Below are positions 16,661-50,584 of a DNA stretch of 64,000 nucleotides, in pieces. Position 1 is the first letter of the stretch, and every line of letters starts with the position of its first letter. The translations under genes and the position numbers were made by a program. Under the pieces are notes generated by a model. The model saw nothing but the letters and a program-made list of their open reading frames with translations. It was not told where the DNA came from and did not search any database. Source of the stretch: Pristiophorus japonicus (taxonomy: Eukaryota); assembly GCF_044704955.1 (NCBI RefSeq), contig NC_091989.1, positions 104,842,001-104,906,000 of the forward strand, in the 5' to 3' direction.

Positions 16661-18798
16661 CGTATGTGTTTGTGTGTGTGCGTGCATGTATTTGNNNNNN
16701 NNNNNNNNNNNNNNNNNNNNNNNNNNNNNNNNNNNNNNNNNNNNNNNNNNNNNNNNNNNNNNNNNNNNNNNNNNNNNNNNNNNNNNNNNNNNNNNNNNNN
16801 NNNNNNNNNNNNNNNNNNNNNNNNNNNNNNNNNNNGCTTGCGTGTGTGTGTCCATGTCTATGTGTGAGTGTATGCATGTGTGTGTGCATATTTATGTGTG
16901 TGTGTGTGTGTGTGTGTGTTTATTTTTGTGTGTATGTATGTGCATGTATCTGCCTGTATATGTGCATGTGTATGTATGTGCATGTGTATGCATTTGTGTG
17001 TATATGTGTGCTGGTATGTGTGTATGANNNNNNNNNNNNNNNNNNNNNNNNNNNNNNNNNNNNNNNNNNNNNNNNNNNNNNNNNNNNNNNNNNNNNNNNN
17101 NNNNNNNNNNNNNNNNNNNNNNNNNNNNNNNNNNNNNNNNNNNNNNNNNNNNNNNNNATGTGTCTGTGAGTTTACATGTGTGTGTTACTGTGTATGTTTG
17201 TGTGTACTCGGAATTCCTTCATGGCAAACGAGCCAAAGGTCGGCAATGGAAACGTTACAAGGACACCCTCAAAGCATCCCTGATAAAGTGTGACGTCCCC
17301 ATTGACATCTGGGTTTCCCTGGCCAAAGACCACCCTAAGTGGAGGAAGTGCATCCAAGAGAGCGCTGAGCACCTCAATTCTCATCGCCGAGAGCATGCAG
17401 AAATCAAGCGCAGCCAGCAGAAAGAGCCTGGGCAAACTTGTGACAGAGTCTGTGGCTCTCGTATTGGACTGTTTAGCCACCAAATAATTCACTTTAAGAG
17501 CGAAAGAGCGATTCCAAGGGACTGCCTATGAATGAAGTGAATTGTGTTTATGTTTGTGTGTATGTGTGTGCATGTATCTGCATGTATGAATGTGTGTTAA
17601 TGTGTGTATGTATTTGTGTGTATTTGTGTGTATGTATGTACATGTATGTGCATGTGTGTGTGCATATGCGTATGTTTGTGCATGTGTATGTGTCTGCATG
17701 TGTGTATGAATGTGTGGGTGTTTGCGTGTTTGTGTGTGTATGTATGGATGAGTGGGTGTGTATGTTTGTGGTTATGTGTGTGTGCATGTGAATGTGTNNN
17801 NNNNNNNNNNNNNNNNNNNNNNNNNNNNNNNNNNNNNNNNNNNNNNNNNNNNNNNNNNNNNNNNNNNNNNNNNNNNNNNNNNNNNNNNNNNNNNNNNNNN
17901 NNNNNNNNNNNNNNNNNNNNNNNNNNNNNNNNNNNNNNNNNNNNNNNNNNNNNNNNNNNNNNNNNNNNNNNNNNNNNGTAAGTGTGTGTGTGCACATGTG
18001 TGTAAGCATATATGTGTGTGCATGTGTTGATGTGTGCATGTATATTTGTCTGCGTGTGTGTATTTATGTGTTGGTATGTTTGTGTGTGAATGTGTGTGTT
18101 TATGTGTGTGGCATGTGTTTGTTGTGTATGTTTGTGTGTATGTGCGCATGTGTGTATGTGTGTCATGTNNNNNNNNNNNNNNNNNNNNNNNNNNNNNNNN
18201 NNNNNNNNNNNNNNNNNNNNNNNNNNNNNNNNNNNNNNNNNNNNNNNNNNNNNNNNNNNNNNNNNNNNNNNNNNNNNNNNNNNNNNNNNNNNNNNNNNNN
18301 NNNNNNNNNTGAGTGTGTTTATGTGTTTATGTGTGTGTGTGCATGTATCAGCATGTGTATATGTGTGTGCATTGGTGTGTGTTGTTTCTCTGAGTATGTG
18401 TGTTTGTGTGTGTATATGTAAGGGTCTGTGTGTATGTGTGTTTATGTGCATGTATGTGGGTGTGTTTTTGTGTGTGGGTGTGGGTGTATGTGTGTGTTTA
18501 TGAGTGTGTGAGGTTGTGTGTGTGTGCATGCGTGTGTGTTTATGTGTGTGTGCATATATATGTGTCTATGTATGTGTGTATGTTTNNNNNNNNNNNNNNN
18601 NNNNNNNNNNNNNNNNNNNNNNNNNNNNNNNNNNNNNNNNNNNNNNNNNNNNNNNNNNNNNNNNNNNNNNNNNNNNNNNNNNNNNNNNNNNNNNNNNNNN
18701 NNNNNNNNNNNNNNNNNNNNNNNNNNNNNNNNNNNNNNNNNNNNNNNNNNNNNNNNNNNNNNNNNNNNNNNNNNNNNNNNNNNNNNNNNNNNNNNNNN
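16661..18798. repeat. Degenerate (TG)n/(TGTA)n low-complexity array with five N runs
   Basis: Seen directly; N blocks at about 16695-16835, 17028-17157, 17798-17977, 18169-18309 and 18586-18798. Confidence 0.95.
17207..17535 (+). mobile_element. RTE-type LINE 3' fragment embedded in the TG array
   Basis: HGKRAKGRQWKRYKDTLKASL matches the RTE C-terminus seen at about 39800-39880 (QGRPRKRYKDCIKANL). Confidence 0.8.
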
Positions 18799-31409: not shown

Positions 31410-31464
31410 ATGTCGGTGAGAGCAACAGTTCAGTGCATGGCTCTTCTGGGCATCCTTTGGCCAG
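31410..31464 (+). CDS. Exon 1: signal peptide MSVRATVQCMALLGILWP
   Basis: ACCATG start, hydrophobic core, CAG|gtacct phase-1 donor. Confidence 0.8.
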
Positions 31465-34400
31465 GTACCTCGAGTTGTTATATGTTTCAGTTCTGAACGG
31501 CAAACTCTATTTTAGAAGATTCTACAACTGTTGTCTTTTGTAAAGTTACTGTGCTTTTCCAATTTGATTGCTGGTGTTTCTTAACTATTCTTGTATTTGA
31601 CGTCTCTTAATTATTTTTCTTTATCTGATGTGTGCAACTGTTATCGCCATTCTTGTTAATTTTCCGATAGCCGTTGAAGTAAATTCGAGCAAAGTGGACC
31701 AATTCCCTGAACACATGGAGGTTGCCAGGGGCACAAATGTTTCCATGTTCTGCACATTTTCCATATTTCAAGATGCCCCCGATGTTTATTGGTGGAGACG
31801 CGGCGACCAGACGTTTCTGCAGCCAGACAGCAGAAAGCAATTTAATGTTAAAAAGGGCAGAGGGTCATTTGATGTCCTCAATGCGAGTGTCGCAGACTCT
31901 GGAATGTATTACTGTACAGTAAAACATAATCAAACCGATGTTGGAGATGGAAGTGGCTCCCGGCTTACTGTGTTCGGTAAGTGCCATTGTGCCGGGGAGT
32001 GGGAGATTCTCAGCAGTGTGCGGTATATGTAAACCTTAATTGTGGGGGTCATTTGAACTTTTATCACTGGACGAAAACCTGGTGATAGCAAATTCGTTTT
32101 ACACTTCTCCCGATTTTCTTTTGCATTGACCCCGGTGTACTCCGGCCCGCCGATTCGCTATCGACCATTTTGCGCTACTGCCCAAGATCAATTTCACCCC
32201 TTCATTGTCCGCATGCAATTCCAAAGGGTTTTATATTCAATGAGTTATTTGGAAATGCAGTTACAGTTGTTATGGAGGTAAGATACTGAAAGAGTATACT
32301 TGTTTAAATCTTGGCTTAAAATGATTAACTTGGATTAGGTGGCCAGATTTCTTATCACCAAAATATCGGTGCCGAGTAGCGACATTGGAAACAATGTTAA
32401 CACCTCTTAGGTCAAGTCTTTTATATAATATTAAAGGTCATCTGCCCCACCCAATGTCTTGCTACAAACCTGTTTATTTCACACATCAGGTAACCTTTTG
32501 AAATTGCCAATCTAATATTTTATATTCTGAATTGCCCAAAATATGGAATTCCCTCTCCCAGAAGGCTGTGGATGGAGAAACAATTGAAGCTTTCAGTATG
32601 AAGATGGATAGATTTCATTAGGCACGGGTATCAAGGGATATAGAGTTAAGTGGGATAAACGAATTTGAGATACAGATCAACCATGATCTAATTGAATGGC
32701 CTGTTCCTATGTCCGCAGTTTAAGCTATGCACTTGCTTCCATTGAGAACTTATTTGAAACTGCCAAACTAATTTCACAAAGGAATCTTACAACCCATTGA
32801 GAGGGGCTATGTTGTTCTTACCCTCATTACTGGATTGGAACCCAAGTCCTAGAGCTGATGGGGCAATGTAGGAACCCAATGACTGCTTGAAACTCGGTCT
32901 TATGCCAATTGAACTTTTTTATACACTCACAACCGGGCAGGATATCACTGAACATTTCTCTAAACGCATGGGCTCCCGTATTTGTACTTGATGGTTTCCA
33001 TTTACACTCCCCCTCAACCCGAGACTGCAATTACGGCAGGAGATCAGAGAACACCGAAGCCGCCACCTCCACGGAAATTCTGCCGCATTACATATTAGAT
33101 ATAAACAGATCCATGGGGAAGGAATGGAGGAATTCTAATCTTAGGTTGGGCAGTCAACACGGTGCTGCTGGGAATAAAGGACAAAATAATTTTCCAAGTT
33201 AATAATGCCCTGATTTAATAAATTGCTATTGCTACAAAGTCGGACAAGTAAAAATGTAAGGAAAAATGTTAAGGAGATTGCTTATAATAAACCGGCAAAA
33301 CAATGCAAACCTAACGAGGGACTCTATTTCCAGCTAAAGAGTATCTGTAGCTTCAGCGGACAGAGGGTCACCTTAGTAACAGACGATTGTAGGACTGATA
33401 TAAGCAGAATCTTCTTCAGGCGAAATGTGTTCAACAGAGCGAATAGACTTGGGGAAGGGCAAAAACCCTGGAATTATATAAGACATGCATTCTGAGTTAG
33501 GATTTCCTATTGGGTTCCCCCCATCTGTATGGATGTTGTGATCTACACAGAGATACACAATTATCTATCTCACCCTTTCGTGACGTGATATCTATTCCAG
33601 CCCTCGGTTCGCGCTCTGGAGAAAGTACATTAAGGAAAGCTGCATGATCTGAAATCTCCCCCACACAAACTGAAATGCTGAATTAGCAACTGGAATGCGC
33701 GAATTCTAATCTATAGATTAGCAGCATCCAGTCTGCCGTCTGTGTAGACGACGGAGATATTTCAATATATTATGTACATCACCTCAATATTCACCGATAA
33801 TTTTAGATCATACATCGAAATATCTCTGTCTACACGGAATGTTGTGCAATATATGAAATATCCGAAAAAGGACCAATTTTGAAATTATCACACAAAATGT
33901 TTAACACCGTAAACATTATTAATGAATAATTGGGCCGTTCCCACTGTTCGTGTAGACTGCGCTCTCTCCGATATATTCGGACAGGAACCTCCCTCGGAGT
34001 CACAATCGCACGCCAGGATCTGATACTTCCATTGAGAACAGTGATGCGAGCCTCCCTGTATGTTACCGATCCTGGGACATTGACCCTGTTTGCGTACCGT
34101 TTCCAATACCCATCATTTCGCTCTGCAGTGCAATCTATAAAATAAATGCAAACAAGTTTAAAAAACGATAGCGCGGATAACTATTGTTAACTATACGGTA
34201 ACCGCATAAGGAGGGTAGGTAAATGAGAATGTCTTCCTTTAAATTGAAATAAAATGATCAATGTAATTTTTTTTCTCTGTTAAAGTTCCCCCAACCCCCC
34301 TAAAAATCGTTGCTGTCGAAGGGATTTCAGCGACTTCTCTGAAACTCGAGTGTAAAACGGCTGGCTTTTACCCGGAGCATTTAGAAATCTCCTGGCGAAG

Positions 34401-37400
34401 AGATGGTGTCGCAAATCTGACCGGAATAGCAACAGGAATACGAAACAGGAGTGCGGAGGAACTGTATGAGGTTTCCAGCTGGTTGGAAGTAGCACAGCCT
34501 GCCCACAGCGGAGTTGTTTATACATGTCTGGTATCTCATGTCTCTCTTCGGGTGCCCGCCAATGTCAGCTACACTGTACAGCAAGGTAAGATTAGAACAT
34601 TTACAGCGGGGAACTGCTCCAACCTGTATTTACTAATTAACAAGTAGCTGGGCAGCTGTTCAAACCCAATGATATTGGGTAACTGTGAATTGTATTTACT
34701 GTTAATGTCACATCAATGGGAATGAAATAAAAATATTCAAAACATGGAGTGAAGGAGGGAGACTGTCTCCATGGAAGATATTTGATAGGGTGTTCAAAAT
34801 CATGAGGAGTTAGAGAGTAGATAGAGCGAATCTGTTCCCACTGGCAGAAGGTTTGACAACCAGAGGACAATGATTTAAAATGATTGGCAGAAGAACCAAA
34901 GATGACATAAGCAAAAACAGTTTTACACAATGAGTGGTTAGGATCTGGAATACACTGCCTGAAAGGGTGGTGGAGGTAAACTCAATTGAGGCTTTCAAAA
35001 AGGATCTGGCTAAGTACCTGAAGAAAAAAAATGCAGGACCCGCAGGACCATGGGAAAAGGGCGAGGGAGTGAGACTAGCTTGTTTTTTCTTCTTTCGCAT
35101 GGTAGTAGCAAGGCAAATCAGATATCAAAGTCAGATATCCAGGCCAAAGCTCCCGGTGTATCTGCAAATTTCCTTTGAGGTCAGTGCTCAATGATGTACC
35201 CCAGGGTCTGATTAGGAGCTCCATAGTTGCTGATGGGGATGCTTTAATCTTCCACCTATGGAGAAGGTGGCAGCATCTACATGACAGGTTCTGAGGTGGT
35301 AATTGCTTGTTACTGTTAGCAAGGAAGGTTTGATCCTTCAGGTCGTACTGTGAGGTCCTTATAAGGACCATGTCACAGTTCTTCCAAGCACTTTGCCATC
35401 GGTCATCAAGGCTAAGGGGAGATTGCTGAAGGGCTTCAGCTATGGCCCAAAATGGCCTTCCAGATTTGAAATTGTTTGGTGGTATTTTCTACAAATCAGC
35501 CTGGATCAGTATGTCTTTGCTGGTGTACCAGTTATAGTCTCTGGAGACTGCGTAATCGCACTGCAGGTGTGGTGATGTGATGTTTGCAAGCACTGGCAGC
35601 CAAGTTGTTGGTGTGGATGGAAACATAGTGGGACAAGCTGAAGTGCTCCTGCAGAGAGCTGGCATGGACTCAATGGGCTGAATGGCCTCCTTCTGTGCTG
35701 TAACCATTCTATATTTCTATGGAGAAATCCGCAACAGGAGATTGATGTGCGAACTGCTCAAAAGCAGAAAGATTATTCCTCCTCAAATGAAATGAAATAA
35801 TGCAACAAATTGATCCATTCTACAAGATTCGCTTGTACATCCTGTGTATTTAAATGTAATATATGGAACTGTCGATGGGTAGATGCTCTCTGGAGTGTAT
35901 AAGGTGAGAGGTGATCTCATTGAAACATATAACCTTCTTAGAGAACTTGTTGAGGAAGATGCTGAGAGGTTGTTTCCCCTGGCTGCAGAGCCTGAAACTA
36001 GGGGGCACAGTTTCAGGATAACAGGTCGGCCGAGATGAAAAGGAATATTTTCATTCAGAGGTTTGTGAACCTTTGAAATTCTCTGCCCCAAAGGGATGTG
36101 GATGCTGAGTAATTGAGTATAATCAAGGCTGTGATCGATAGATTTGCGAACTTTAAGGTAATAACGCGATCTAGTGATTGGGTGGGCAAGTGGAGTTGAG
36201 GTCGAAAATCAGCCACGATCTTATTGAAGGCTCGAGGGTTCGTATGGCCTACTACTGCCCTAATTTGTATGTACTTATTATGTTCATCTGTTCTCATCGC
36301 ATCGTGCCTTCAGCTGTCTAGACTGTAAACTTTGGAATTCCCGCTCTAAACCTCTTCTCTTCTGTACCTCGCTCTCCTTCTTTAAGACGTTCCAATCCCC
36401 TACTTCATCCTGTCCTAATTGTGACTCGGTCTCAAATTTTCGATAATGCTCCTGTGAATTGACTTGGGACGTTTTAATATGTTAACGGCGCTATGTAAAT
36501 GCTAGTCGTTCTTGTTGCCTATCAAAAGTTGCAATAGGTTCCCTCCAGTAAGGCTGGTCAGGGATGGCAGCACTGGAGAATGGACGACTTGATCAATTTT
36601 TGTAGTCGGTGCCCATCAATCAGATGTTGCACGGCTAGGTAAAACATGAAACTCTCTTTACTCTTAATTAGCAACCCTCGTGTGCAGAGAGAAACTTCCT
36701 GGGCCTTTATGTAATGAGATTTGTTTTCTCGAAAAATTGCATCACTGACTTGCAGTTAACTTCGTTTGGTACACGTTATAATCCTTGCACATCTGCAGCC
36801 CATAGAAATAAAAGAGGTCGAGCCCCACTGACAGTAAGTGGGCGCCATCATCCCGAGAGGCACCTTTGGAACTCGCCCTCCTGGCCGGACCCATGATTCG
36901 CTGTGTATATCTCTCTCTATATTCTACCGTTTCTTATTTCAATTACCTGTTGATCCTGTAGGTCCTGGTGCCATTGTTCCGGTGATTTTTGGATCTGCAG
37001 GGGGCGCATTGGCAATTTTACTCTTAATTATAATTTTGACGAGACTCAGATTAAAGTCATCAGACGGTAAGAACCTTTCTTATTTAGCCGAAACCGTTTG
37101 TTTTCTGCGGTCCAGTTGTAGTGTTACAAAATCGAAAGGGCGGAAGAAAAGGGATTGATTGTAGAGGAATAAAGTGCACTTTACTGTCTATATCTTTAAA
37201 GAATGAAGCTAATACCACAAGAGCGTTATGTGGTTGGCGCTAGTTGAATATGACAACGTAAACCGAATCTTGAAATGCAAATATTCGAACAATTCACTCA
37301 AATCATACACTTCAATTTCGCAACACTCGGAATCCTCAATGTTCTGCAATATTTTAGCATCAGTCCGGGTCCAGATCTTGAAGAGTAAACACTTTGCGGT

Positions 37401-40400
37401 AGATGTTGACTTTTTGCGATAGTGTAAAACGGATGACAGCGAATTGGCAGCCTGCTTTACATCTCTCCCGATTTTTATTCCCATTGAAGTCACAGAGAGA
37501 GATGTAAATGAACTGCCGACTCACTATCACCCGTTGTACACTATCGCACAAAGTGTGGGGGTACTCCATCGGGTGCAGCGTCACTGCGGGGTCTGAGACG
37601 GTACTACACTGTAAGGACTGGTACTTCTAAACACCTTCAATCAGATCTTTACCGTCAGATCTCCTTATTTAACAAAGTAAAGTCAACCAACATCAACTCA
37701 TGTTGGCTTTGCCGGTACACAGATTAAGTTATTCAAGATGTTTTTTTTTCCTTTAGGCATTAAGAGAAATTCTGAGGAAGCGGGTCAGATTGAAGAACCG
37801 GTAGGACGACAATGTTCTTTATGTTCCTAAAAGAGGTGGCTGGGGGAAGAGCAACACAATATACATTCAGCCGAGATTACTTATATTTCATAGAATCATA
37901 AACTCTTACAACACAGAAGGAGGCCATCGTGCCTGTTCCGGCTCTTTGAAAGAGCTATCCAATTAGCACCCCCCCCCCCCCCCCCCACACCCCCTATTTA
38001 CCCATAGCCCTGCAATTGTTTTCGTCTCAATTCCCATTTTCTAAATTTTTACTGAATCTACTCCGTCATCCTTACAGTCAGTGCGTTCCAGATCAGAACA
38101 GCTGGCTGCATAAAAATACTCCTCATCTTCTCTCTGGTTCTTTTGCCAATTATCTTAAATCTGTGTCATTTGGATACCAACCAACCCACCAGTGGAAACA
38201 GTTTCTCCTTATTTACTGTATCAAAACCCATCAGAATTTTGAACACCTCTACTACATTGTCCCTTAACCATCTCTGCTCCAAGGAGAACAATCGCAGCTG
38301 TAAGATCCTCCAATAGGCTGGGCTGGCTGAGGAATAGGAAGGTGGCCCACACCCCACCATCAGGAGAGTAGAGAGATAGAGATAGTGAAAACCTTCAGAG
38401 GAGTAGAGAGATAGGGAAAATTGGGGATGGGAAGGGGGAAATGAGCAATGTATTCATAGGATATTTATTAGCTGTGCTCTAAATCATCCTGACTTTAAAC
38501 GTAGGTAAATAATTTGTGTGCTATGGGTTTCATAACACGCAATAATCCACACCTTATGGGTGAGATATTGGCTAAAGTCATTGTGAGTGCGGACAGAATG
38601 TATTCGTGCCCATACCTATCGGTTACTGTGTGCATATTTACACTTTCAGACTCAGTTCCAATTGATGGTAGCTGGCAGCTGTAAGGGATTCACCACTATC
38701 AGTATTCGATGTCTTATTCTTACAGGTTGTTGCCTACACTACTCTAAACTTGAGAGACAACAGAGGACCTCCCAAACGGAGACAGGAGAAAGAGCAGACC
38801 ATCTATTCCCAGGTAGAGCAGAGGGTCTGGCGCCAATAATATCCAAATCATTTCCATACAAAATCAACAGAGGCAATGTCAACAATCTGTATAGAAACGT
38901 GGTGGTAATTTTGACTTTGTGCAACAGTGTAATAATCATGGGCGATTTTAACTTTCATATTAATTGGACAAAGCAAATTGGCCAGGGCAGCCTTGAGGAA
39001 GATTTCATAGAGTGTTTCCTTGAACAGTACATTGCGGAACCAACCAGGGAGCAGGCTATTAATAGATCTGGTGCTGTGTAATAAGACAGGATTCATAAAT
39101 GATCTTGTAGTAAAGGATCCTCTGGGAATGAGTGACCATAACATGGTTGAATTTCAAATTCAGTTGGAGGGTGAGAAAGTTGGTTCTCAAACTAGGGTCC
39201 TTAGCTTAAATAAAGGGATAACCATACGTGGCTAACTGAAGAAATAAGGGAAGGGAAGGAAAATAATTGAAAACAAGGGCATACAATGTGGCCAAGATTC
39301 GTGGGAGGCCAGAGGATTGGGAAACTTTTAAAAGCCAGCAAAGAGCAACTAAAAAATGATAAAGAGAGGGATGATAGATTATGAAAGTAAACTATATGAA
39401 ACATAAAAACAGATAATAAGAGTTTCTACGTGTACATAAAAAAGAAAAGAGTGGCTAAAGTAAATGTTGGCCCCCTAGAGAATGAGACTGGGGAATTAAG
39501 AATCTTGGTAGTCTGCCGTATGCAACAAAGACGTTGATGTGCTAATCATCAATGGCATGTGGCTTCAAGTGGCTGTATAGGCCAATTCTGGATGCACATA
39601 GTCTCTTGCACGTCGGACAAGGGAAGTTCGATGTGTCTGATGCTGACAGTACCGCCACCTGATGCCGCCTATCTCTAGTGTCCCGCAGGCGTTGACATCG
39701 GCTTTCTTCGAAGGTCTGGCAGGCAGTCCTCGTGAGGGTTCACCGCTGGATTTTATTAGCTGCTGTATTCTCGAGGTCCTTTAGTCGGATGCCAGAGTAC
39801 TGGAGGTTAGCCTTGATGCAATCTTTGTAGCGCTTGCGGGGGCGCCCCTGGTGTCTTTGACCTTCACAGAGCTCGCTGTGAAGAAGCTGATGAGGGATCC
39901 TTAACTCATCCATGTGGATGACATGTCCAGCCCACCAGAACTGGGCTCGCATGATCAGCACCTCAATGCTAGTTGATTGTGCTCTCTCCAGAATCTCAAA
40001 GTTTGACACCCAGTCTTGCCAGCGAATGTGGAGTATAGATCTGAGACTGCGCATATGGAAAGCTTCCAACTTTTTGATGTGATGCCTGTAGGGTGCCCAG
40101 GTCTCACATCCATAAAGGAGAGATGAGAGAACGACTGCTCTATACACCAACAGTTTAGTTGACAGTCGGATGTTGTGGTGACAACACTTTAGTGCGCAAG
40201 CAACCAAGTGCCTGTCTGGCTTTACAGATCCTTGCATCAATTCCTTGTCCAAGGACCCATCACTTGATATGGTGCTGCCAAGGTACTTGAAGCTGTCCAC
40301 TGACTTTAGTTGTATACTGCCGATGAAGACTGTGGGAGCAGGTGCTGTGGTGCCAGGGGCAGGCTGATAGAGAACCTCGGTTTTACTAAGGCTGATGGTT

Positions 40401-43400
40401 AGGCCAAACAATTCTGTTGTCGCAGCAAATTTGCTGAGTATGAATTGTAGGTCACTCTCCTTGTGTGCCATAAGGGCGCACTCGTCAGCAAAGAGTGCCT
40501 CTAAGATGAGTCGTTTCTGTACTTTGGTCTTTGCAGCAAGGCGGCGGAGATCGAACAGTGAACCATCTAATCGATATTTCAGGTAGACCCCAAACTCCAA
40601 GTCTTTTATGGCATAGTTCAAGATGCAGGTAAAGAATAGGTTGAACAGAACTGGAGCGAGTACACAACCTTGTTTCACTCCATTTGAGAGGGCAAATGGG
40701 GCTGTGGTTGTGCCGTCTGAGAGCACTTCACATGTCATGTTGTCATGAAACAGCGCAATGATGTAGACAAACTTCCTTGGGCACCCAAGTTTCATCAAGA
40801 TTGACCACAGCGCTGCTCTGTTGACAGTATCAAAGGCCTTGGTGAGGTCAATAAATACAGCGTACAGGTCCACGTTCTGCTCAATGCACTTCTCCTGCAC
40901 TTGTCTGAGTGCAAAGATCATGTCCGCTGCGCTCCGACCAGGTCGAAAGCCACATTGTGTTTCTGGAAGATTTACTTCTGAGACACTAGCTATGAGTCGG
41001 TTCAATACTATGCGGGCGATGATCTTCCCAGCAATGGACAGAAGCGATATTCCCCTGTAGTTGCCACAATCTGCTTTGTTGTCCTTGTTCTTGTAGAAGG
41101 AAACTATCATAGTGTTACAGAAGTCCTGTGGCATGTCTTCATCTTCCCAGATGCTAGTTATTATGTCATGAAAGGCCTCGAGAGTTGCTGGGCTTACTGC
41201 CTTGTAGATTTCGGCAGGGATTCCATCCTTTCCTGGAGCCTTTCCAGTACTCATCTGGTTGATGGGTTTCTTTACTTCGTCCATGCTGGGTGGAAGATCA
41301 AGATCTTCTTTGATAGGTTGCTGGTGTATGGAGTCAAGTGCTTCTTCTTTCACTGTTGAAGGTCGATTAAGAAGATTACTGAAGTGTTCTCTCCACCTCT
41401 CATGTATGCCAGTCCTGTCTTTGATCAAAATGCTGCCATCTGCTGAAAGGAGTGGGGTAGTGCTGGGTTTTGATGGTCCATAGACTGACTTGATGGCGCT
41501 GAAGAACATCTTGCTATTGTGAGTTTCAGCATAATGTTCCACTTCCTCTGCTTTCGGCTGCCACCATTTATCTTGCATCTGGCGAAGGTCTCTTTGTGCT
41601 TTGCTCTGCATATGTCTGTAACGGTCCCTCTTGGTAATTGAGGAAGCATCATTTTGCCATTCTAGGTATGCTTTTTTCTTTTCATCCAGCGTCTTACAGA
41701 TCTCAACATTGTTTTCATTGAACCAGTCTTGGTGTACCTTCTTTTTAAGTCCAAGAGTTGTCTTTGCTGAATCTGTCACCATCTGTTTGAGCTTTGTCCA
41801 CTTCTGTGTGATGTTGCCGATGAGCGGTCCGTGAGACATCAGCCTGTTATCGAGGTCATCCTGGAACTGCTCACGGTAGCACTGATGTTTCAGCCTAGCT
41901 GTGTTAAAGGCACTTCTGCTCGGTTTTCGACGCTTGCGCTGAAGTGGAGCAATGTACAGCTGGAGAGTGGGTCTGACTAGACGGTGATCTGTCCAGCATT
42001 CTGCTCCCCGCATGGCTCGTGTGATTTTTTTACATCCTTCATATCTCGCCTTCTTACAATGACATGGTCTATCATGTGCCATTGCTTAAACCTGGGGTGC
42101 ATCCAAGTTGTTTTGTACTTGTCGGCCTGCCTGAATAGAGTATTTGTGATAGTCAAGTCGTTCTCCGCGCAATACTCAAGAGGAGGAGGCCATTACTATT
42201 TAATTTTCCTGTGCCGTGCTGTCCAATGACTCCCTTCCAGGGCTTGCTGTCTTTTCCAACTCATGCATTGAAATCACCCAGGATGATCAACTTGTCTCCA
42301 GCAGGTGTGAACCTGACCAGTCTGTCTAGATCTTCATAGAACCTCTCTTTCATCTCATCGGGGCTTGGAAGGATGGGTGCATAAGCACTTATAATGGTGA
42401 TGTGGCGTTTGGCATTCAGGGTGAAACGCAGTTTCATAAGTCTTTCGTTAATCCCTTCAGGCAGATTCGGAAACTGTTGCATAACAGAAGTCTTCACTGC
42501 TATGCCAACTCCGTGGATCCTATTCTCTTTCTCTGCCTTGCCTTTCCAATAGAAGGTGTAGCCGCTACCTAGTTCACTCATGCAGCCCTCCTCTGCAAGT
42601 CTTGTCTCACTCAGAGCTGCTATATCGATGTTATAATGCTGCAGCTCTCTTGCAATAAAGTTAGTCCTTCTTTCTGGTCTTGTAGTGTCAGCTCCGTCTA
42701 AGAGTGTGCGAATGTTCTATTGTCCGAGAAGAAGTTTTCTTGTGTTATGAAGTTTTCAACTGTTGCTATATTTTCGACCGCAGAATGGGTTGAACTGCCA
42801 GCCGCGGTATACTGGCCAGTTAATGGAAGGGCAGGCAATGTTTGGGCCACCTTTTCTAGGCCCCTCCCTTATAAAGGGTGAGCAGTGCTGTCCTAAAGAG
42901 GGCTGCTCAGTCGCCTGGGGTGCTGCCGGGTTCCTCTGCTGCCCTGGATAGAGAGTCAAATTACCACTTTCCCACAGGCCGCCTACATGCAGGTTTGAGG
43001 CTACGACTCCCAGTGATCACCTCCACCTGTCGCTTTGTCCCTCCCCCATCGCCGCAGGACTTGGTATGTTGGATGATGGTTAGCACGAACCTGTACATAG
43101 ATGCTTTTAAAGTGGGAAGGCCGGTACACAGGGGAATTAAGAATACAGAACAGGCAAATGGCAGAGACGTTGAACAAATATGTTGTATTGGTCTTCATGG
43201 TAGAAGACACTAAAACATCCCAATAGTGGATAATCAAGGGGCTATAAGGAGGTAGGAACTTAATACAATCAGTATCACTAATGAAGTTGTACTCGGTAAA
43301 ATAAAGGCGAAGAAGTTTCCTGGATCTGATGGCTTACATCCTAGGTCTTAAAAGAGGTGGCTGCAGAGATAGTGGATGCATTGGTTCTAATCTACCAAAA

Positions 43401-45531
43401 TTCCCTGGATTCTGGAGGCAGTCCCAGTGGATTGGAAAACCGCAAATGTAATGCACCTATTTAAAAAAGAAGGCAGACAAAAACCAGGAAACTATAGACC
43501 AGTTAGCTTAACATCCTGTTGTTGAGAAAATGCTAGAGTTCATTTTTAAGGAAGTGGGACATTTAGAAAAGCATAATTCAATCAAGCAGAGCCAGAATGG
43601 TTTTATGAAAGGGAAATCATGTTTGACAAATTTGCTGGAGTTCTTTGAGGATGTAACGAGTAGAGTTAATAAGGAGGAACCAGTGGATGTGGTGTATTTG
43701 GATTTCCAGAAGGCATTCGATAAGGTGCCACATAAAAGGTTACTGCACAAAATAAAAGTTCATATGGTAGGGGGGTAATATATTAGCATGGATAGAGGAT
43801 TGGCTAACTAACAGAAAACAGGGAGTCAGGATAAATGGGTCATTTTCTGGTTGGTAAACAGTGACTACTGGGGTGCCACACGGATCAGTACTAGGTCCTC
43901 AAATATTTACAATCTATAATGATGACTTGGATGAAGGGTCCGAGTGTAATGTAGCCAAGTTTGCTGATACAAACATGGGCGGGAAAGCAAATTGTGAGAG
44001 GACACAAAAAATCTACAGAGGGATAAAGGCAGGCTAAGTGAGTGGGCAAAAATCTGGCAAATGGAGTATAGTGTGGGAAAATGTGAGGTTAGCAGTAAAA
44101 TAGAAAAGCAAATTTCAATTTAAATGGAGAAAAATTGCAAAGTGTTGCAGTACAGAGGGACTTTGGGGTCCTTGTGCATGAAACACGAAAAGTTAGTATG
44201 CAGGTACAGCAAGGAAACAGGAAGGCAAATGGAATGTTGGCCTTTATTGCAAGGGGGATAGAGTATAAATGCTACAACTGCACAGGGTACTGGAAACGCC
44301 ACACCTCAAGTACTGTGTACAGTTTTGGTCTCCGTATTTACGGAAAGATATACTTGCATTGGAGGCTGTACAGAGAAGGTTCACTAGGTTGATTCCAGAG
44401 ATGAGGGGGTGATTTATGAAGATAGGATGAGTAGGTTGGGCCTATACACATTGGAGTTCAGAAGAATGAGAGGTGACTTCAATGGAAATAATATCGGGAG
44501 ATGTAAAACGGGCCGCGGATTCCCTGTCATCAGACTTACACTATCGCACACCAACATTATCCCAGTTTGTTTCTCGAGTCTGGCTGATAATGATTGCTTT
44601 GAACTACAAATTGCAGAATAAGAAACTCACCTGATCAGATTGGCAAATATCTCTGTTATAGACGAAGCAAGGAACCGATGACAGACTGACCTACGCCGCT
44701 CTCGTAACCAGCACCACGAAAAACGCGAAAGGCAGACAGGAGGAGAGCACGGTGTATGCCCAGGTACAGCTCAGGTCATTCACTGAAACACAATACTGAG
44801 CCGCAGGAAATAGAAAGGTCCCAGGTTTAATCTAGCAAGTGTGTTGTGTCGGCTGATCGCAGACAGGTTTCATTATAATTGACCTTCGTGTCCCAGGGAT
44901 CGGCTGAAAAGTACAAATGCGCGGCAGGTTCCACCTTGGAGCCTCCCCCGTGGGATCAGCAGGTCACCCTGGCTGTCGGCTCTCGCCTTAAAACGGTGCT
45001 TTGCGATATGAGTATTCCAAATATTTAACAGGCGAGTATGACATTGCTTTGTCTGCTATTTTAATTGAAATATTAACCTGCTCATGTAAATGATTTACAA
45101 CATTAGACGAACTCATTTTATATGAGCATTAAACCGGAATATTAACGAGATTTTTTCGGGCCCAAGAATGGACACTGAAGGGGAGGGCAGCTGCTCCTGG
45201 AATTGGAGCCCAACAGGAATCAGTGTTTGCCGAGCAGGGAGAAACCGGAGACAATACAATCAATCAGTACAAAGTCTGAATAAACCGCTTCCAATCTGAA
45301 GTTAGGAATTGATGAGAGGAAATTTCCCCGCAGCCTTTTTTAAACCGCAGTGTGCAATGGACTAACGGGTGCTCCTAAATGTCACTTTCACAGACTAAAC
45401 AAAGAGGCGGAGATAAGCTGACTTACACCGCCCTGCAGTTTGCTGATTCTAAGAAAACATCAACATCTAAACACCAAGGCCAGGGCGCGGTGTCTGCAGA
45501 AGTGAACCTGAGAAACAAAGAGAGGAGCTGA
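31410..45531 (+). CDS. SIRP-alpha-like / VJ-C1 Ig-superfamily inhibitory receptor, 378 aa; join(31410-31464,31671-31976,34286-34585,36962-37066,37757-37800,38726-38812,44662-44763,45394-45531)
   Basis: All introns are GT-AG with consistent phases (1,1,1,1,0,0,0); 1137 nt open frame; leader, V, C1, TM and three ITIM exons in canonical order. Confidence 0.88.
31671..31976 (+). CDS. Exon 2: V-set Ig domain with germline-joined J-like G strand
   Basis: VSMFC...VYWW...DSGMYYC...GDGSGSRLTV; tttccgatag acceptor, G|gtaagt donor; 306 nt. Confidence 0.95.
34286..34585 (+). CDS. Exon 3: C1-set Ig domain (absent from the ORF track)
   Basis: LECKTAGFYPEHLEISW...YEVSSWL...YTCLVSHVSL; ttttctctgttaaag acceptor, G|gtaaga donor; 300 nt. 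Confidence 0.95.
36962..37066 (+). CDS. Exon 4: transmembrane segment
   Basis: GPGAIVPVIFGSAGGALAILLLIIILTRLRLKSSD; basic stop-transfer residues; G|gtaaga donor. Confidence 0.92.
37397..37560. mobile_element. Palindromic MITE of about 160 bp; relatives at about 9766-9872, 32045-32200, 44476-44555, 58760-58912 and 59270-59455
   Basis: Arms ttgcgatagtgtaaaacggatgacagcgaattggcag / ctgccgactcactatcacccgttgtacactatcgca are reverse complements. Confidence 0.7.
37757..37800 (+). CDS. Exon 5: juxtamembrane cytoplasmic exon GIKRNSEEAGQIEEP
   Basis: Strong tttttttttcctttag acceptor; phase 1 to phase 0; gtagga donor. Confidence 0.75.
38726..38812 (+). CDS. Exon 6: ITIM exon A (VVAYTTLNLRDNRGPPKRRQEKEQTIYSQ)
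   Basis: cttattcttacag acceptor; ITIM VAYTTL; CAG|gtagag donor. Confidence 0.85.
38913..44478 (+). mobile_element. CR1 LINE in intron 6, split by an RTE insertion (pieces 38913-39503 and 43131-44478)
   Basis: APE motif IIMGDFN before the RTE and RT motifs (VYLDFQKAFDKVPH) after it. Confidence 0.88.
39504..43130 (-). mobile_element. Full-length RTE-clade (BovB-like) LINE with a 14-bp TSD
   Basis: APE (IAALSETR, ISAYAP, ILGDFNA) and RT (QCGFRPGRS, GVKQGCVLAP, LFADE) domains; TSD ggggaattaagaat at 39490-39503 and 43131-43144; a few stops and frameshifts. Confidence 0.95.
44662..44763 (+). CDS. Exon 7: ITIM exon B (TKQGTDDRLTYAALVTSTTKNAKGRQEESTVYAQ)
   Basis: ctctgttatag acceptor; ITIM LTYAAL; CAG|gtacag donor. 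Confidence 0.85.
45394..45531 (+). CDS. Exon 8: terminal ITIM exon C (TKQRGGDKLTYTALQFADSKKTSTSKHQGQGAVSAEVNLRNKERS*)
   Basis: ACTAAC branch point at 45361-45366, cactttcacag acceptor; ITIM LTYTAL; TGA at 45529-45531. Confidence 0.87.
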   Translation, partial: TKQRGGDKLTYTALQFADSKKTSTSKHQGQGAVSAEVNLRNKERS

Positions 45532-49326: not shown

Positions 49327-50584
49327 CAGGTGCAGCGTCCAGAATCCGGAACCCTTGGGACCAAGTCCGTTCCGGATTTTGCGCTTTGCCAGAATTTGAA
49401 ACGTCTTTCTGATGTCACGAATCCGGAAACATCCGAGCCCAGGTTCGGGTGTTTCCGGATTTTGGAACATCAGAAAGAGGGGGAGGGGGGATGGCCATCG
49501 ATGAGCTGTTCGGGTCGCCAGGTGGGGCCCCACAACCGTGGAAGTGTTCGGGCGGGGCCCCGCCGCTCTGGAGTTGTTCAGGCCGGGCCCCACCGCTGTG
49601 GAGTTGATCAGGCGGGACTTCGCTGCCATGGAGTTGTTCGCACGGGCCCCGCGAAGAGGAGATATTCTTCGCATGGGCCCCGCCAAAGAGGAGATGTTCG
49701 CGCGGGGCCCTGCCACCGAAATGTTCATGCGGGGCCTCGCCGCCGTGGAGGTGTTCGGGTGGGGCCCCGCTGAAGAGGAGCTGCTCAGGTGGGGCCCTGT
49801 ACGGAGGAGGTGTTCTTGTAGGGCCCCGTCGCGGAGGAGGTGTTCGTGCGGACTGGCGAGTTGAGGCCTGAGGTTGGGCGGTGGCGGCGATGGGCGGTGA
49901 GGCAAGGCCTGAGGTCGTGCGAAGAGGTCTGAGATCAGGCGGTGGCGAGGGGTGGTGTGGCGAGGTCCGAGGTTGGGCAGCAGCGATGCTGAGGCGAGGT
50001 CCGAGGTTGGGCAGCAGCGGTGCTGAGGCGAGGCCGGAGGTTGGGCAGCGGCAGCGGTGAGGCGAGGCCCGAGGTCGGGCAGCGGAGACGGATGGTGTGG
50101 CGAGGCCCGAGGTCGGTCAGCGGCAGCGGTGAAGCAAGGCCCGGGCAGCAGAGATGGACGTTGTGGCGAGGCCCGAGGTCGGGCAGCGGCGAGAGGTGGT
50201 AGCGAGGCCCGAGGTCGGGCAGCAGTCGGCGGTGAGGCGAGGCTCGAGGTCGGGCGGCGAAGTGAGGCCTGAGGTTGGGCAGCGGCGAGAGGTGGTGTGG
50301 CGAGGCCCGAAGTCGGGCAGCGAGGCGAGCCCCAAGGTCGGGCAGCGGCGAGGGATGGTGTGGCGAGGCCCGAGGTCGGGCAGCAGCGAAGGGTGGTGTG
50401 GCGAGGCCCGAGGTCGGGCAGCGACGATGAGGCCCGAAATCGGGCAGCGGCGGCCTCAAGGTCGGCAGGTTCCTGATTCCAGAACATTTTACGGATTGCG
50501 GATAACCGTGCCACCAATCGGTTTGGAGTCCGAATTCCGGCACATTCCGGATTCCGGACCTCTGGATTTTGGACGCTGCACCTG
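49327..50584. mobile_element. Non-autonomous Tc1/mariner (Tigger/pogo-like) element filled with GC-rich tandem repeats
   Basis: TA|CAGGTGCAGCGTCCAGAATCC...GGATTTTGGACGCTGCACCTG|TA gives TIRs with a TA TSD. Confidence 0.88.

What the first reader, a model, noticed from the sequence alone, without database searches (positions are those of the whole stretch)
31410..45531. Non-rearranging VJ-C1 antigen-receptor-like inhibitory receptor hidden among transposons
Seen: an intact 8-exon, 378-aa gene. A single exon encodes a V domain with a joined J-like GDGSGSRLTV strand, followed by a true C1-set domain (CxxxGFYP...W...YTCxVxH), an uncharged TM and a tail with three ITIMs. No recombination signal sequences flank or split the V. 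Established: C1-set domains are largely confined to Ig, TCR, MHC, B2M, tapasin, SIRP and some B7-family proteins, and germline VJ-C1 genes are discussed as models of the pre-RAG antigen-receptor ancestor. The ITIM / TxY alternation mirrors the SIRP-alpha tail. Inference: a shark SIRP-like or lineage-specific checkpoint receptor with a TCR-chain-like V-C1 ectodomain. I cannot assign it a known symbol or confirm novelty.
Basis: partly seen in the sequence, partly recalled or inferred. Interest (0 to 1): 0.85.

Follow-up and report, generated by a model that had tools for sequence, protein, structure and literature searches.

The report
Shark SIRP-like inhibitory V-C1 receptor gene
This is a real, intact eight-exon gene for a non-rearranging immune receptor (one short variable-type domain, one C1 constant domain, a membrane anchor and an inhibitory tail), but it is one ordinary member of a large family predicted in every shark, ray and chimaera genome checked, not a unique relic.

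Summary
Eight exons with GT-AG borders and compatible phases add up to 378 codons: leader, single-exon V with a J-like strand, one C1-set exon, an uncharged TM exon, and four tail exons carrying three ITIMs. No RSS is present above chance.

Every exon has a homologue in RefSeq proteins of other cartilaginous fish. The best match is a 380-aa Heterodontus francisci protein (V 72%, C1 76%).

The gene belongs to a V-C1-TM family of more than 60 proteins. All 30 members I looked up are chondrichthyan. Their automatic names contradict each other: SIRP-alpha-like, SIRP-beta-like, B7-H6-like, tapasin-related, Ig-lambda-like, TCR-beta-like and MHC-II-beta-like.

The family has inhibitory members (ITIM tails) and activating-type members (Arg or Lys in the TM, short tail), so it is a paired-receptor family. 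SIRP is the closest known family by architecture, tail layout and language-model features. True SIRP orthology is unresolved: there is one C1 instead of two, the C1 tree keeps the family apart, and Ig light chains score as well as SIRP.

I found no paper on this family. Transcription could not be tested because no RNA run was listed.

Earlier follow-ups in this scan reached the same reading for other family members elsewhere in this genome (other DNA). The joined 378-aa model was never searched or folded; all work was exon by exon.

The parts
31410..31464 (+). Exon 1: start codon and split leader (18 codons + 1 nt, phase 1), donor GTACCT
   Evidence: Sequence read. 78% identical to the N-termini of Heterodontus relatives P0152 and P0166.
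31671..31976 (+). Exon 2: single-exon V domain with J-like G strand (GDGSGSRLTV), phase 1-1
   Evidence: Pfam V-set E 6e-11, I-set E 4e-9. 72% identical to P0152. AF2 model pLDDT 92.6 with a split G strand. Structural neighbours are TCR V, IgNAR V, V-lambda and NCAM I-set. No RSS.
34286..34585 (+). Exon 3: C1-set domain (CKTAGFYPE..W..YTCLVSH), phase 1-1
   Evidence: Pfam C1-set E 5e-10. 76% identical to P0152. AF2 pLDDT 81 with seven strands. Neighbours are UrIg2 C3 (Z 14.0), MHC II beta2, IgNAR C, B7-H6 C and SIRP-gamma d3 (Z 12.3).
36962..37066 (+). Exon 4: short stalk, uncharged transmembrane helix, stop-transfer RLRLK
   Evidence: 82% identical to P0152 and P0164. The family Cys in GCAGG is Ser here.
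37757..37800 (+). Exon 5: 44-nt cytoplasmic linker that shifts the phase from 1 to 0
   Evidence: 85% identical to the same position of P0163.
38726..38812 (+). Exon 6: tail module 1, ITIM VAYTTL plus a distal Tyr (TIYSQ|) 23 residues on
   Evidence: 66% identical to P0152 residues 276-304.
44662..44763 (+). Exon 7: tail module 2, ITIM LTYAAL plus a distal Tyr (TVYAQ|) 21 residues on
   Evidence: Matches tail modules of P0193, P0165 and P0152.
45394..45531 (+). Exon 8: tail module 3, ITIM LTYTAL; distal motif degenerate (AVSAEV, Tyr replaced by Ser); stop codon
   Evidence: 65% identical to the C-terminus of P0152, which reads AVYAEV at that place.
39743..42581 (-). LINE element inside intron 6 (reverse transcriptase plus endonuclease ORFs). 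Not part of the gene product.
   Evidence: Pfam RVT_1 E 1e-32; Exo_endo_phos E 5e-4.
43512..43775 (+). Sense-strand LINE reverse-transcriptase ORF in intron 6, with further RT-like frames downstream that were not tested. Intronic.
   Evidence: Pfam RVT_1 E 2e-7 for 43512-43775. A weak endonuclease hit lies at 38587-39078.

Best explanation
The locus is an intact, germline-joined (non-rearranging) gene for an inhibitory member of a multigene V-C1-TM receptor family. The family is so far seen only in cartilaginous fish, and annotation pipelines mostly label it 'SIRP-alpha-like'. Shown here: the exon structure, the domain types, family membership, the ITIM motifs, and the existence of charged-TM, short-tail relatives. 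Inferred: the protein sits on leukocytes and its short V domain binds an unknown ligand. Src-family kinases then phosphorylate the tail tyrosines. Each tail exon supplies an ITIM plus a second Tyr 21-23 residues downstream, the spacing used by the tandem SH2 domains of SHP-1/SHP-2 on SIRP-alpha. The recruited phosphatase damps signals, including those from activating relatives that carry Arg or Lys in the membrane helix and would pair with an ITAM adaptor.
For: All eight exons are homologous to RefSeq proteins of other chondrichthyans, and all nearly invariant family residues are kept. An exhaustive HMMER search with the C1 exon found dozens of single-C1 relatives at 43-77% identity, with the C1 at about residues 122-220 behind a V. 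Thirty of 30 members looked up are chondrichthyan. Of 95 family proteins with a TM region, 36 have an uncharged TM plus ITIMs and 27 have a charged TM core and no ITIM. The window gene falls in a well-supported subclade (SH-aLRT 99) containing both shark and batoid members, in the C1 tree and consistently in the V tree. For the closest orthologue, the nearest named ESM Atlas clusters are two SIRP-alpha clusters (score 0.96, 205 of 256 features). In the PDB profile search SIRP-alpha scores 107 bits across V-C1 plus the second C1. The human SIRP-alpha tail has ITYADLNL followed 24 residues later by TEYASI (PMC5589908; PMC5413580); the window has VAYTTLNL followed 23 residues later by TIYSQ. The TM and tail of three relatives give sub-threshold hits to Pfam SIT, the SHP2-interacting adaptor (E 0.003-0.02).
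Against: There is no transcript evidence: no RNA run was listed, so splicing rests on homology with predicted proteins. No ligand, cell type or phosphatase binding was tested. The distal tyrosines read TxYxxT after splicing, which is not a canonical ITSM. The third distal Tyr is lost. SIRP-likeness of the ectodomain is not specific: Ig light chains score 88-94 bits over one V-C stretch, and structural neighbours of the C1 are tied across UrIg2, MHC, Ig, B7-H6 and SIRP.
Confidence: 0.8

Rival explanations
1. It is a true SIRP: the family descends from the same ancestral gene as tetrapod SIRP-alpha/beta/gamma, having lost one C1 domain, and would bind a CD47-like ligand.
For: The automatic names are mostly SIRP-alpha-like or SIRP-beta-like. 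The ESM Atlas nearest named clusters are SIRP-alpha clusters. The family shows the same paired inhibitory/activating design. The tail has ITIM plus distal Tyr pairs with YxxLNL and 23-24-residue spacing, as in human SIRP-alpha. Lungfish SIRP-like C1 domains get the highest single-domain score with the family C1 profile, though only just (54 bits against 50 for Ig lambda).
Against: It has one C1 where SIRPs have two. In the C1 tree the family is its own clade (SH-aLRT 94) and its link to lungfish SIRP-like C1s is unsupported (61). With the V exon alone, no SIRP chain is among the 60 best PDB hits, whereas TCR V and IgNAR V are. The V is a short V/I-type domain. Synteny with the SIRP locus could not be examined.
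Confidence: 0.3
2. It is an independent cartilaginous-fish lineage derived from an antigen-receptor-like or UrIg-like VJ-C1 ancestor, and its SIRP-like tail and pairing arose by convergence or exon shuffling.
For: Ig light chains match the V-C1 profile as well as SIRP does. The best structural match of the C1 is shark UrIg2 C3 (Z 14.0). V neighbours are TCR V and IgNAR V. No bony-vertebrate member was found by the profile word search. Exon shuffling does occur in the family: Heterodontus P0165 has a C1 from the window gene's subclade but a V from another clade.
Against: The UrIg2 V-C1 stretch scores lower (57 bits) than Ig light chains or SIRP. UrIg and UrIg2 have 3 and 9-11 C domains and different tails (PMC12227049). 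The searches that reached beyond cartilaginous fish were word-limited, so absence in bony fish is not shown.
Confidence: 0.3
3. The gene is intact in sequence but is silent or decaying, a recently dead copy in a fast-turnover multigene family.
For: No expression data exist. The last distal Tyr is lost, and the family TM Cys is replaced by Ser. Intron 6 is loaded with LINEs. Earlier notes report broken family exons elsewhere in this genome (unchecked).
Against: All eight exons are open, all splice sites are canonical, all nearly invariant residues are kept, and exon identities to the orthologue are 65-85% with no frameshift.
Confidence: 0.1

Closest known systems
SIRP family (SIRP-alpha/SHPS-1, SIRP-beta, SIRP-gamma)
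   Same: It is non-rearranging and has an N-terminal V-type domain with a J-like GxGxxLxV strand followed by C1-set domains. It has paired inhibitory members (ITIM tail) and activating members (basic residue in the TM). The tail is built of an ITIM plus a second Tyr about 23 residues downstream, including YxxLNL. It is the usual automatic name and the nearest ESM Atlas cluster.
   Different: It has one C1 domain, not two. The V is short with little C'/C''. There are three tail modules, each on its own exon. The distal motifs read TxYxxT. The C1 tree does not join the family to SIRP-like C1s. The ligand and the synteny are unknown.
UrIg and UrIg2 (non-rearranging elasmobranch VJ-C1 genes; Flajnik et al. 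2023, 2025)
   Same: It is a cartilaginous-fish gene with a split leader, a single-exon VJ and C1-type domains. UrIg2 C3 is the top structural match of the C1 model.
   Different: UrIg is secreted and has three C domains. UrIg2 has 9-11 C domains. Neither has an ITIM tail. The UrIg2 V-C1 stretch scores lower against the family profile than Ig light chains or SIRP.
Ig light chains and TCR chains
   Same: The domain order is V(J)-C1. Ig light chains match the family profile about as well as SIRP does. TCR V and IgNAR V are the V domain's structural neighbours.
   Different: There are no RSS, no separate V and J segments and no rearrangement. The TM is uncharged and carries a long ITIM tail. There is no membrane-proximal Cys for chain pairing.
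Other germline VJ receptors with ITIMs (NKp30/NCR3, agnathan TCR-like and APAR, teleost NITR)
   Same: They have a germline-joined V with a J-like strand. Several come as inhibitory/activating pairs. (Recalled from memory, not tested here.)
   Different: As far as I recall, these lack a C1-set domain. No sequence comparison was run here.

Membership tests
Chondrichthyan V-C1-TM family (unnamed; auto-labelled SIRP-like) | Leader, single-exon V ending in GxGxGxxLxV, then a C1 exon starting PPTPL and containing C.TA.FYP..W..YTCLVSH | tested here: met
   Alignments A1-A3 keep all nearly invariant columns. V is 72% and C1 76% identical to Heterodontus P0152.
Chondrichthyan V-C1-TM family (unnamed; auto-labelled SIRP-like) | Groups inside the family in domain trees | tested here: met
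   In the C1 tree the family is one clade (SH-aLRT 94) and the window sits in a subclade supported at 99. The V tree places it next to the same proteins.
SIRP family | [quoted passage not shown] | tested here: not met
   There is only one C1 exon. tblastn of the C1 exon finds no second copy in the 64-kb window. Most relatives also have a single C1.
SIRP family | Cytoplasmic ITIMs that recruit SHP-1/SHP-2 (alpha type), or a basic TM residue pairing with DAP12 (beta type) | tested here: inconclusive
   Three ITIM motifs and an uncharged TM are present. Arg/Lys-TM relatives exist. Phosphatase and adaptor binding are not testable here.
SIRP family | Sequence grouping with bona fide SIRPs | tested here: inconclusive
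   ESM Atlas nearest named clusters are SIRP-alpha clusters. In the PDB profile search SIRP-alpha scores 107 bits against 88-94 for Ig light chains. The C1 tree gives no supported link to lungfish SIRP-like C1s. No curated mammalian SIRP sequence could be put in a tree.
SIRP family | Binds CD47; located in the SIRP gene cluster | not testable with these tools
The window holds no other gene for synteny.
Rearranging antigen receptor chain (Ig/TCR) | V and J as separate segments flanked by RSS heptamer-spacer-nonamer | tested here: not met
   V and J are contiguous in one exon. There are 2 weak RSS-like hits in 14 kb against 1.3 expected by chance.
UrIg / UrIg2 | VJ followed by three (UrIg) or nine to eleven (UrIg2) C1-type domains (PMC12227049) | tested here: not met
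   The gene has a single C1 exon and an ITIM tail. The UrIg2 V-C1 stretch scores 57 bits, below Ig light chains.
C1-set Ig domain | Seven-strand constant-type fold with the FYP...W...YxCxVxH signature | tested here: met
   Pfam C1-set E 5e-10. The AF2 model has seven strands. The listed Foldseek hits are MHC II C1-set domains and IgNAR C domains, and the VIA list is dominated by C1-type domains of UrIg2, MHC, Ig, CD1, B7-H6 and SIRP-gamma, with butyrophilin C domains lower down.
V-set Ig domain with J-like strand | Cys-Trp-Cys core, YYC, G strand with a GxG bulge, C' and C'' strands | tested here: inconclusive
   The core, YYC and a split G strand are present. The C-to-D segment is only about 12 residues. 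The I-set Pfam score is close to the V-set score. The top structural matches mix NCAM I-set (Z 14.6) with IgNAR V (Z 14.3) and TCR V.
ITIM-bearing inhibitory receptor (functional class) | [ILVS]xYxx[ILV] in the cytoplasmic tail behind an uncharged TM | tested here: met
   VAYTTL, LTYAAL and LTYTAL are present, and the TM core has no charged residue.

The most novel reading that the evidence does not exclude
The family is not a SIRP offshoot. It is a surviving membrane-bound lineage of the pre-RAG VJ-C1-TM receptor chain, a cell-surface counterpart of UrIg/UrIg2 and closer to the Ig/TCR stem than to SIRPs. Its exon-modular tail can also be shortened by intron retention into forms that end in a canonical TxYxxV motif.
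Probability: 0.1. Interest if true: 0.8.

Novelty: new member of a known kind. Interest (0 to 1): 0.4.

Why it matters
Germline-joined VJ-C1 genes are sought as models of the receptor that the RAG transposon invaded. UrIg and UrIg2 were published on that basis. This gene shows the minimal chain layout (VJ, one C1, TM) in a family that spans sharks, rays and chimaeras. The family has both inhibitory and activating forms, carries contradictory database names, and has no description in the literature I could search. A curated phylogeny and synteny analysis of the family could show whether SIRP-type paired receptors date back to the gnathostome ancestor, and how they relate to Ig, TCR and UrIg. 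The single gene in this window adds one ordinary member.

Tried and rejected
Transcript evidence. The look-up of sequencing runs with the V exon listed no RNA run. Read laying therefore could not be used, and splicing is supported only by homology.

Dimerisation. Complex prediction on two copies of the C1 exon gave no verdict (score 0.00). This is neither for nor against dimerisation.

Joined model. Only exons by reference and database relatives were used.

Second C1 exon (SIRP-type V-C1-C1). None was found in the window.

RSS. None above chance.

UrIg/UrIg2 membership. Rejected on domain number and profile score.

'ITSM' reading of TIYSQV and TVYAQV. Rejected for the spliced product. The Val codon is the intron's GT, and relatives read TVYAQ-TKQ across the junction.

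Bony-vertebrate members. The profile word search returned only chondrichthyans plus one spurious hit. This test is insensitive and is not evidence of absence.

Literature. Searches for UrIg, PRARP, SIRP plus shark or Callorhinchus, and non-rearranging receptors found the UrIg2 and MHC papers but nothing on this family. PMC10530332 was not held.

Other genes for synteny. The long ORFs tested in the rest of the window are LINE remnants, have no Pfam match, or (49.3-50.6 kb) read through a minisatellite.

N runs at 16.7-18.8 kb were left untouched.
Full report
**What is in the sequence**

On the + strand between 31410 and 45531 there are eight open exons. Their borders are all AG/GT and their phases fit (1,1,1,1, then 0,0,0):
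- e1 31410-31464: leader
- e2 31671-31976: V domain
- e3 34286-34585: C1 domain
- e4 36962-37066: stalk and TM
- e5 37757-37800
- e6 38726-38812
- e7 44662-44763
- e8 45394-45531, with the stop

I checked each exon's translation separately.

Pfam calls e2 V-set (E 6e-11, with I-set close behind) and e3 C1-set (E 5e-10). The quoted signatures are present. The TM core is uncharged. The tail has three ITIMs: VAYTTL, LTYAAL and LTYTAL.

V and J are contiguous in one exon. A heptamer/nonamer scan of the whole gene gave 2 weak hits against 1.3 expected by chance, so the gene does not rearrange. Intron 6 is filled with LINE reverse-transcriptase and endonuclease ORFs on both strands.

**Structure models**

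An AlphaFold model of the C1 exon (pLDDT 81, seven strands) matches C1-set domains:
- The listed Foldseek hits are MHC II C1-set domains plus IgNAR C domains.
- By VIA-align the top match is shark UrIg2 C3 (Z 14.0, rmsd 1.6, 91 residues aligned). It is tied within one Z unit with MHC II, IgG CH3, IgNAR C and B7-H6. SIRP-gamma d3 is at Z 12.3, with butyrophilin C domains lower down.

The V model (pLDDT 92.6) has a G strand split at the GxG bulge but only about 12 residues between strands C and D. Its neighbours are a mix of IgNAR V (Z 14.3), TCR V, CD79b and I-set domains such as NCAM2 Ig1 (Z 14.6). It is therefore a short V/I-type domain with a J-like strand, not a full TCR-type V.

**Relatives**

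An exhaustive HMMER search of 1.8 billion representatives with the C1 exon returned dozens of proteins of 200-420 aa with a single C1 match at 43-77% identity, usually at residues about 122-220 behind a V domain.

The best is Heterodontus francisci XP_067906043.1 (P0152, 380 aa). Exon-by-exon identities to the relatives:

| Exon | Identity | Compared with |
|---|---|---|
| Leader (e1) | 78% | P0152 |
| V (e2) | 72% | P0152 |
| C1 (e3) | 76% | P0152 |
| TM (e4) | 82% | P0152 |
| e5 | 85% | P0163 |
| e6 | 66% | P0152 |
| e8 | 65% | P0152 |

The relatives read TVYAQ-TKQ across the exon 7/8 junction, which supports the splice pattern. All nearly invariant family columns are kept in the window gene.

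Thirty of 30 members looked up come from sharks, rays or the chimaera Callorhinchus. Their automatic names contradict each other: SIRP-alpha-like, SIRP-beta-1-like, NCR3LG1-like, tapasin-related-like, Ig lambda-like, TCR beta-like, MHC II beta-like and 'uncharacterized'. This indicates there is no stable orthology to a named gene.

A profile word search found no convincing bony-vertebrate member, but that search is insensitive.

**Paired receptors**

Of 95 family proteins with a membrane region, 36 have an uncharged TM and ITIM tails. Another 27 have Arg, Lys or another charged residue in the TM core and no ITIM, typically an Arg in the outer third and a short tail. The window gene is of the inhibitory type.

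**Trees**

In a C1-domain tree the family is one clade (SH-aLRT 94). It is separate from lungfish SIRP-like C1 repeats, Ig light-chain C, shark multi-C1 (UrIg2-like) proteins and MHC I alpha3. Its link to any of these is unsupported (61).

The window gene lies in a subclade supported at 99 that contains shark and batoid members, so this subfamily predates the shark/ray split. The V tree places it beside the same proteins.

One Heterodontus protein (P0165) has a C1 of this subclade but a V from another clade, a sign of exon shuffling within the family.

**Which known family is closest?**

A profile of 40 family members against PDB sequences gave these scores:

| PDB chain | Score | Stretches |
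|---|---|---|
| UrIg2 | 131 bits | three (V-C1 stretch alone 57 bits) |
| SIRP-alpha | 107 bits | two (V-d2 plus d3) |
| SIRP-gamma | 95 bits | two |
| Many Ig light chains | 88-94 bits | one V-C stretch |

The ectodomain therefore does not discriminate between SIRP and Ig light chains.

Three things point to SIRP:
- The paired inhibitory/activating design.
- The ESM Atlas features of the orthologue P0152. Its two nearest named clusters are SIRP-alpha clusters (score 0.96, 205 of 256 features). This is a lead, not an alignment.
- The tail layout. Human SIRP-alpha has ITYADLNL followed 24 residues later by TEYASI, and LTYADL followed by a second such motif (PMC5589908; PMC5413580). The window gene has VAYTTLNL followed 23 residues later by TIYSQ, LTYAAL followed 21 later by TVYAQ, and LTYTAL followed 23 later by a position where relatives have Tyr but this gene has Ser.

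Three things count against simple membership:
- There is one C1 instead of two (definition in PMC12975943).
- The V domain is short.
- The tree gives no support for a SIRP link.

UrIg and UrIg2 (PMC12227049) differ in C-domain number and tail. I do not file the gene there.

**Mechanism**

Shown:
- domain architecture
- ITIM motifs
- uncharged TM
- existence of activating-type relatives

Inferred from established knowledge of ITIM receptors and SIRP-alpha:
- ligand engagement by the V domain
- tyrosine phosphorylation of the tail
- docking of SHP-1/SHP-2 tandem SH2 domains on the ITIM/distal-Tyr pairs
- inhibition of signals

Sub-threshold Pfam hits of the TM-plus-tail region of three relatives to SIT, the SHP2-interacting adaptor (E 0.003-0.02), are consistent with this but weak.

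The apparent ITSMs (TxYxxV) in the genomic reading are an effect of phase-0 donors, because GT always reads as Val. After splicing the motif is TxYxxT.

**Limits**

- No RNA run was listed, so expression and splicing are untested.
- The homodimer prediction gave no verdict.
- No curated mammalian SIRP sequence could be placed in a tree.

**Earlier scan notes**

Other first-stage notes and follow-ups on this genome describe further members of the same family. They lie 13 kb, 0.6 Mb, 6.5 Mb and 19 Mb before this window, and on another piece next to TTF2. They reached the same 'shark SIRP-like V-C1 receptor family' reading. My tests were independent of those notes and agree with them.

**Verdict**

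The gene is a new, ordinary member of an unnamed but widely predicted chondrichthyan paired-receptor family, whose closest known analogue is SIRP.

Noticed in passing
window 38813-38836 and 44764-44796: If intron 6 or intron 7 were retained, the reading frame would run on for 8 or 11 codons to a stop. That would give shorter tails ending in a canonical TxYxxV motif (TIYSQV..., TVYAQV...). The Val is just the donor GT, so this may mean nothing without RNA data.
   Followed up: partly
window 45475-45492 (exon 8): The last tail motif reads AVSAEV where the Heterodontus orthologue and other close relatives have a Tyr (AVYAEV, TVYAGV, VEYAEV). The window gene has lost its final tyrosine. It also has Ser in place of the family's conserved TM Cys (GCAGG becomes GSAGG, exon 4).
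   Followed up: partly
Heterodontus protein P0165 (no locus held): Its C1 domain groups with the window gene's subclade, but its V domain groups with a different clade (only 38% identical to the window V). This suggests V-exon shuffling between subfamilies.
   Followed up: partly
window 38587-39235 and 43512-43775 (+), 39743-42581 (-): A minus-strand LINE (RT plus EN) lies between sense-strand LINE-like fragments: a weak endonuclease hit at 38587-39078 and a reverse-transcriptase hit at 43512-43775. This may be one element inserted into another. The nested insertions make up most of the 5.8-kb intron 6.
   Followed up: partly
window 49519-50424: A GC-rich minisatellite (periods about 30-38 and 68 bp) creates a 422-codon low-complexity 'ORF' on the minus strand with no Pfam match. 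It is not a gene.
   Followed up: yes
window 31601-31670 (3' end of intron 1): The stretch just upstream of the V exon is open in frame and resembles the extra leader segment (VIFLYLMYATVT) of Heterodontus isoform P0164. In the window I saw no AG acceptor in the 5' end of that stretch (checked by eye only), so the resemblance may only reflect a conserved intron end.
   Followed up: no
window 16695-18798: Five runs of N (805 bases in all) lie in an AT-rich stretch. They were left as they are.
   Followed up: no
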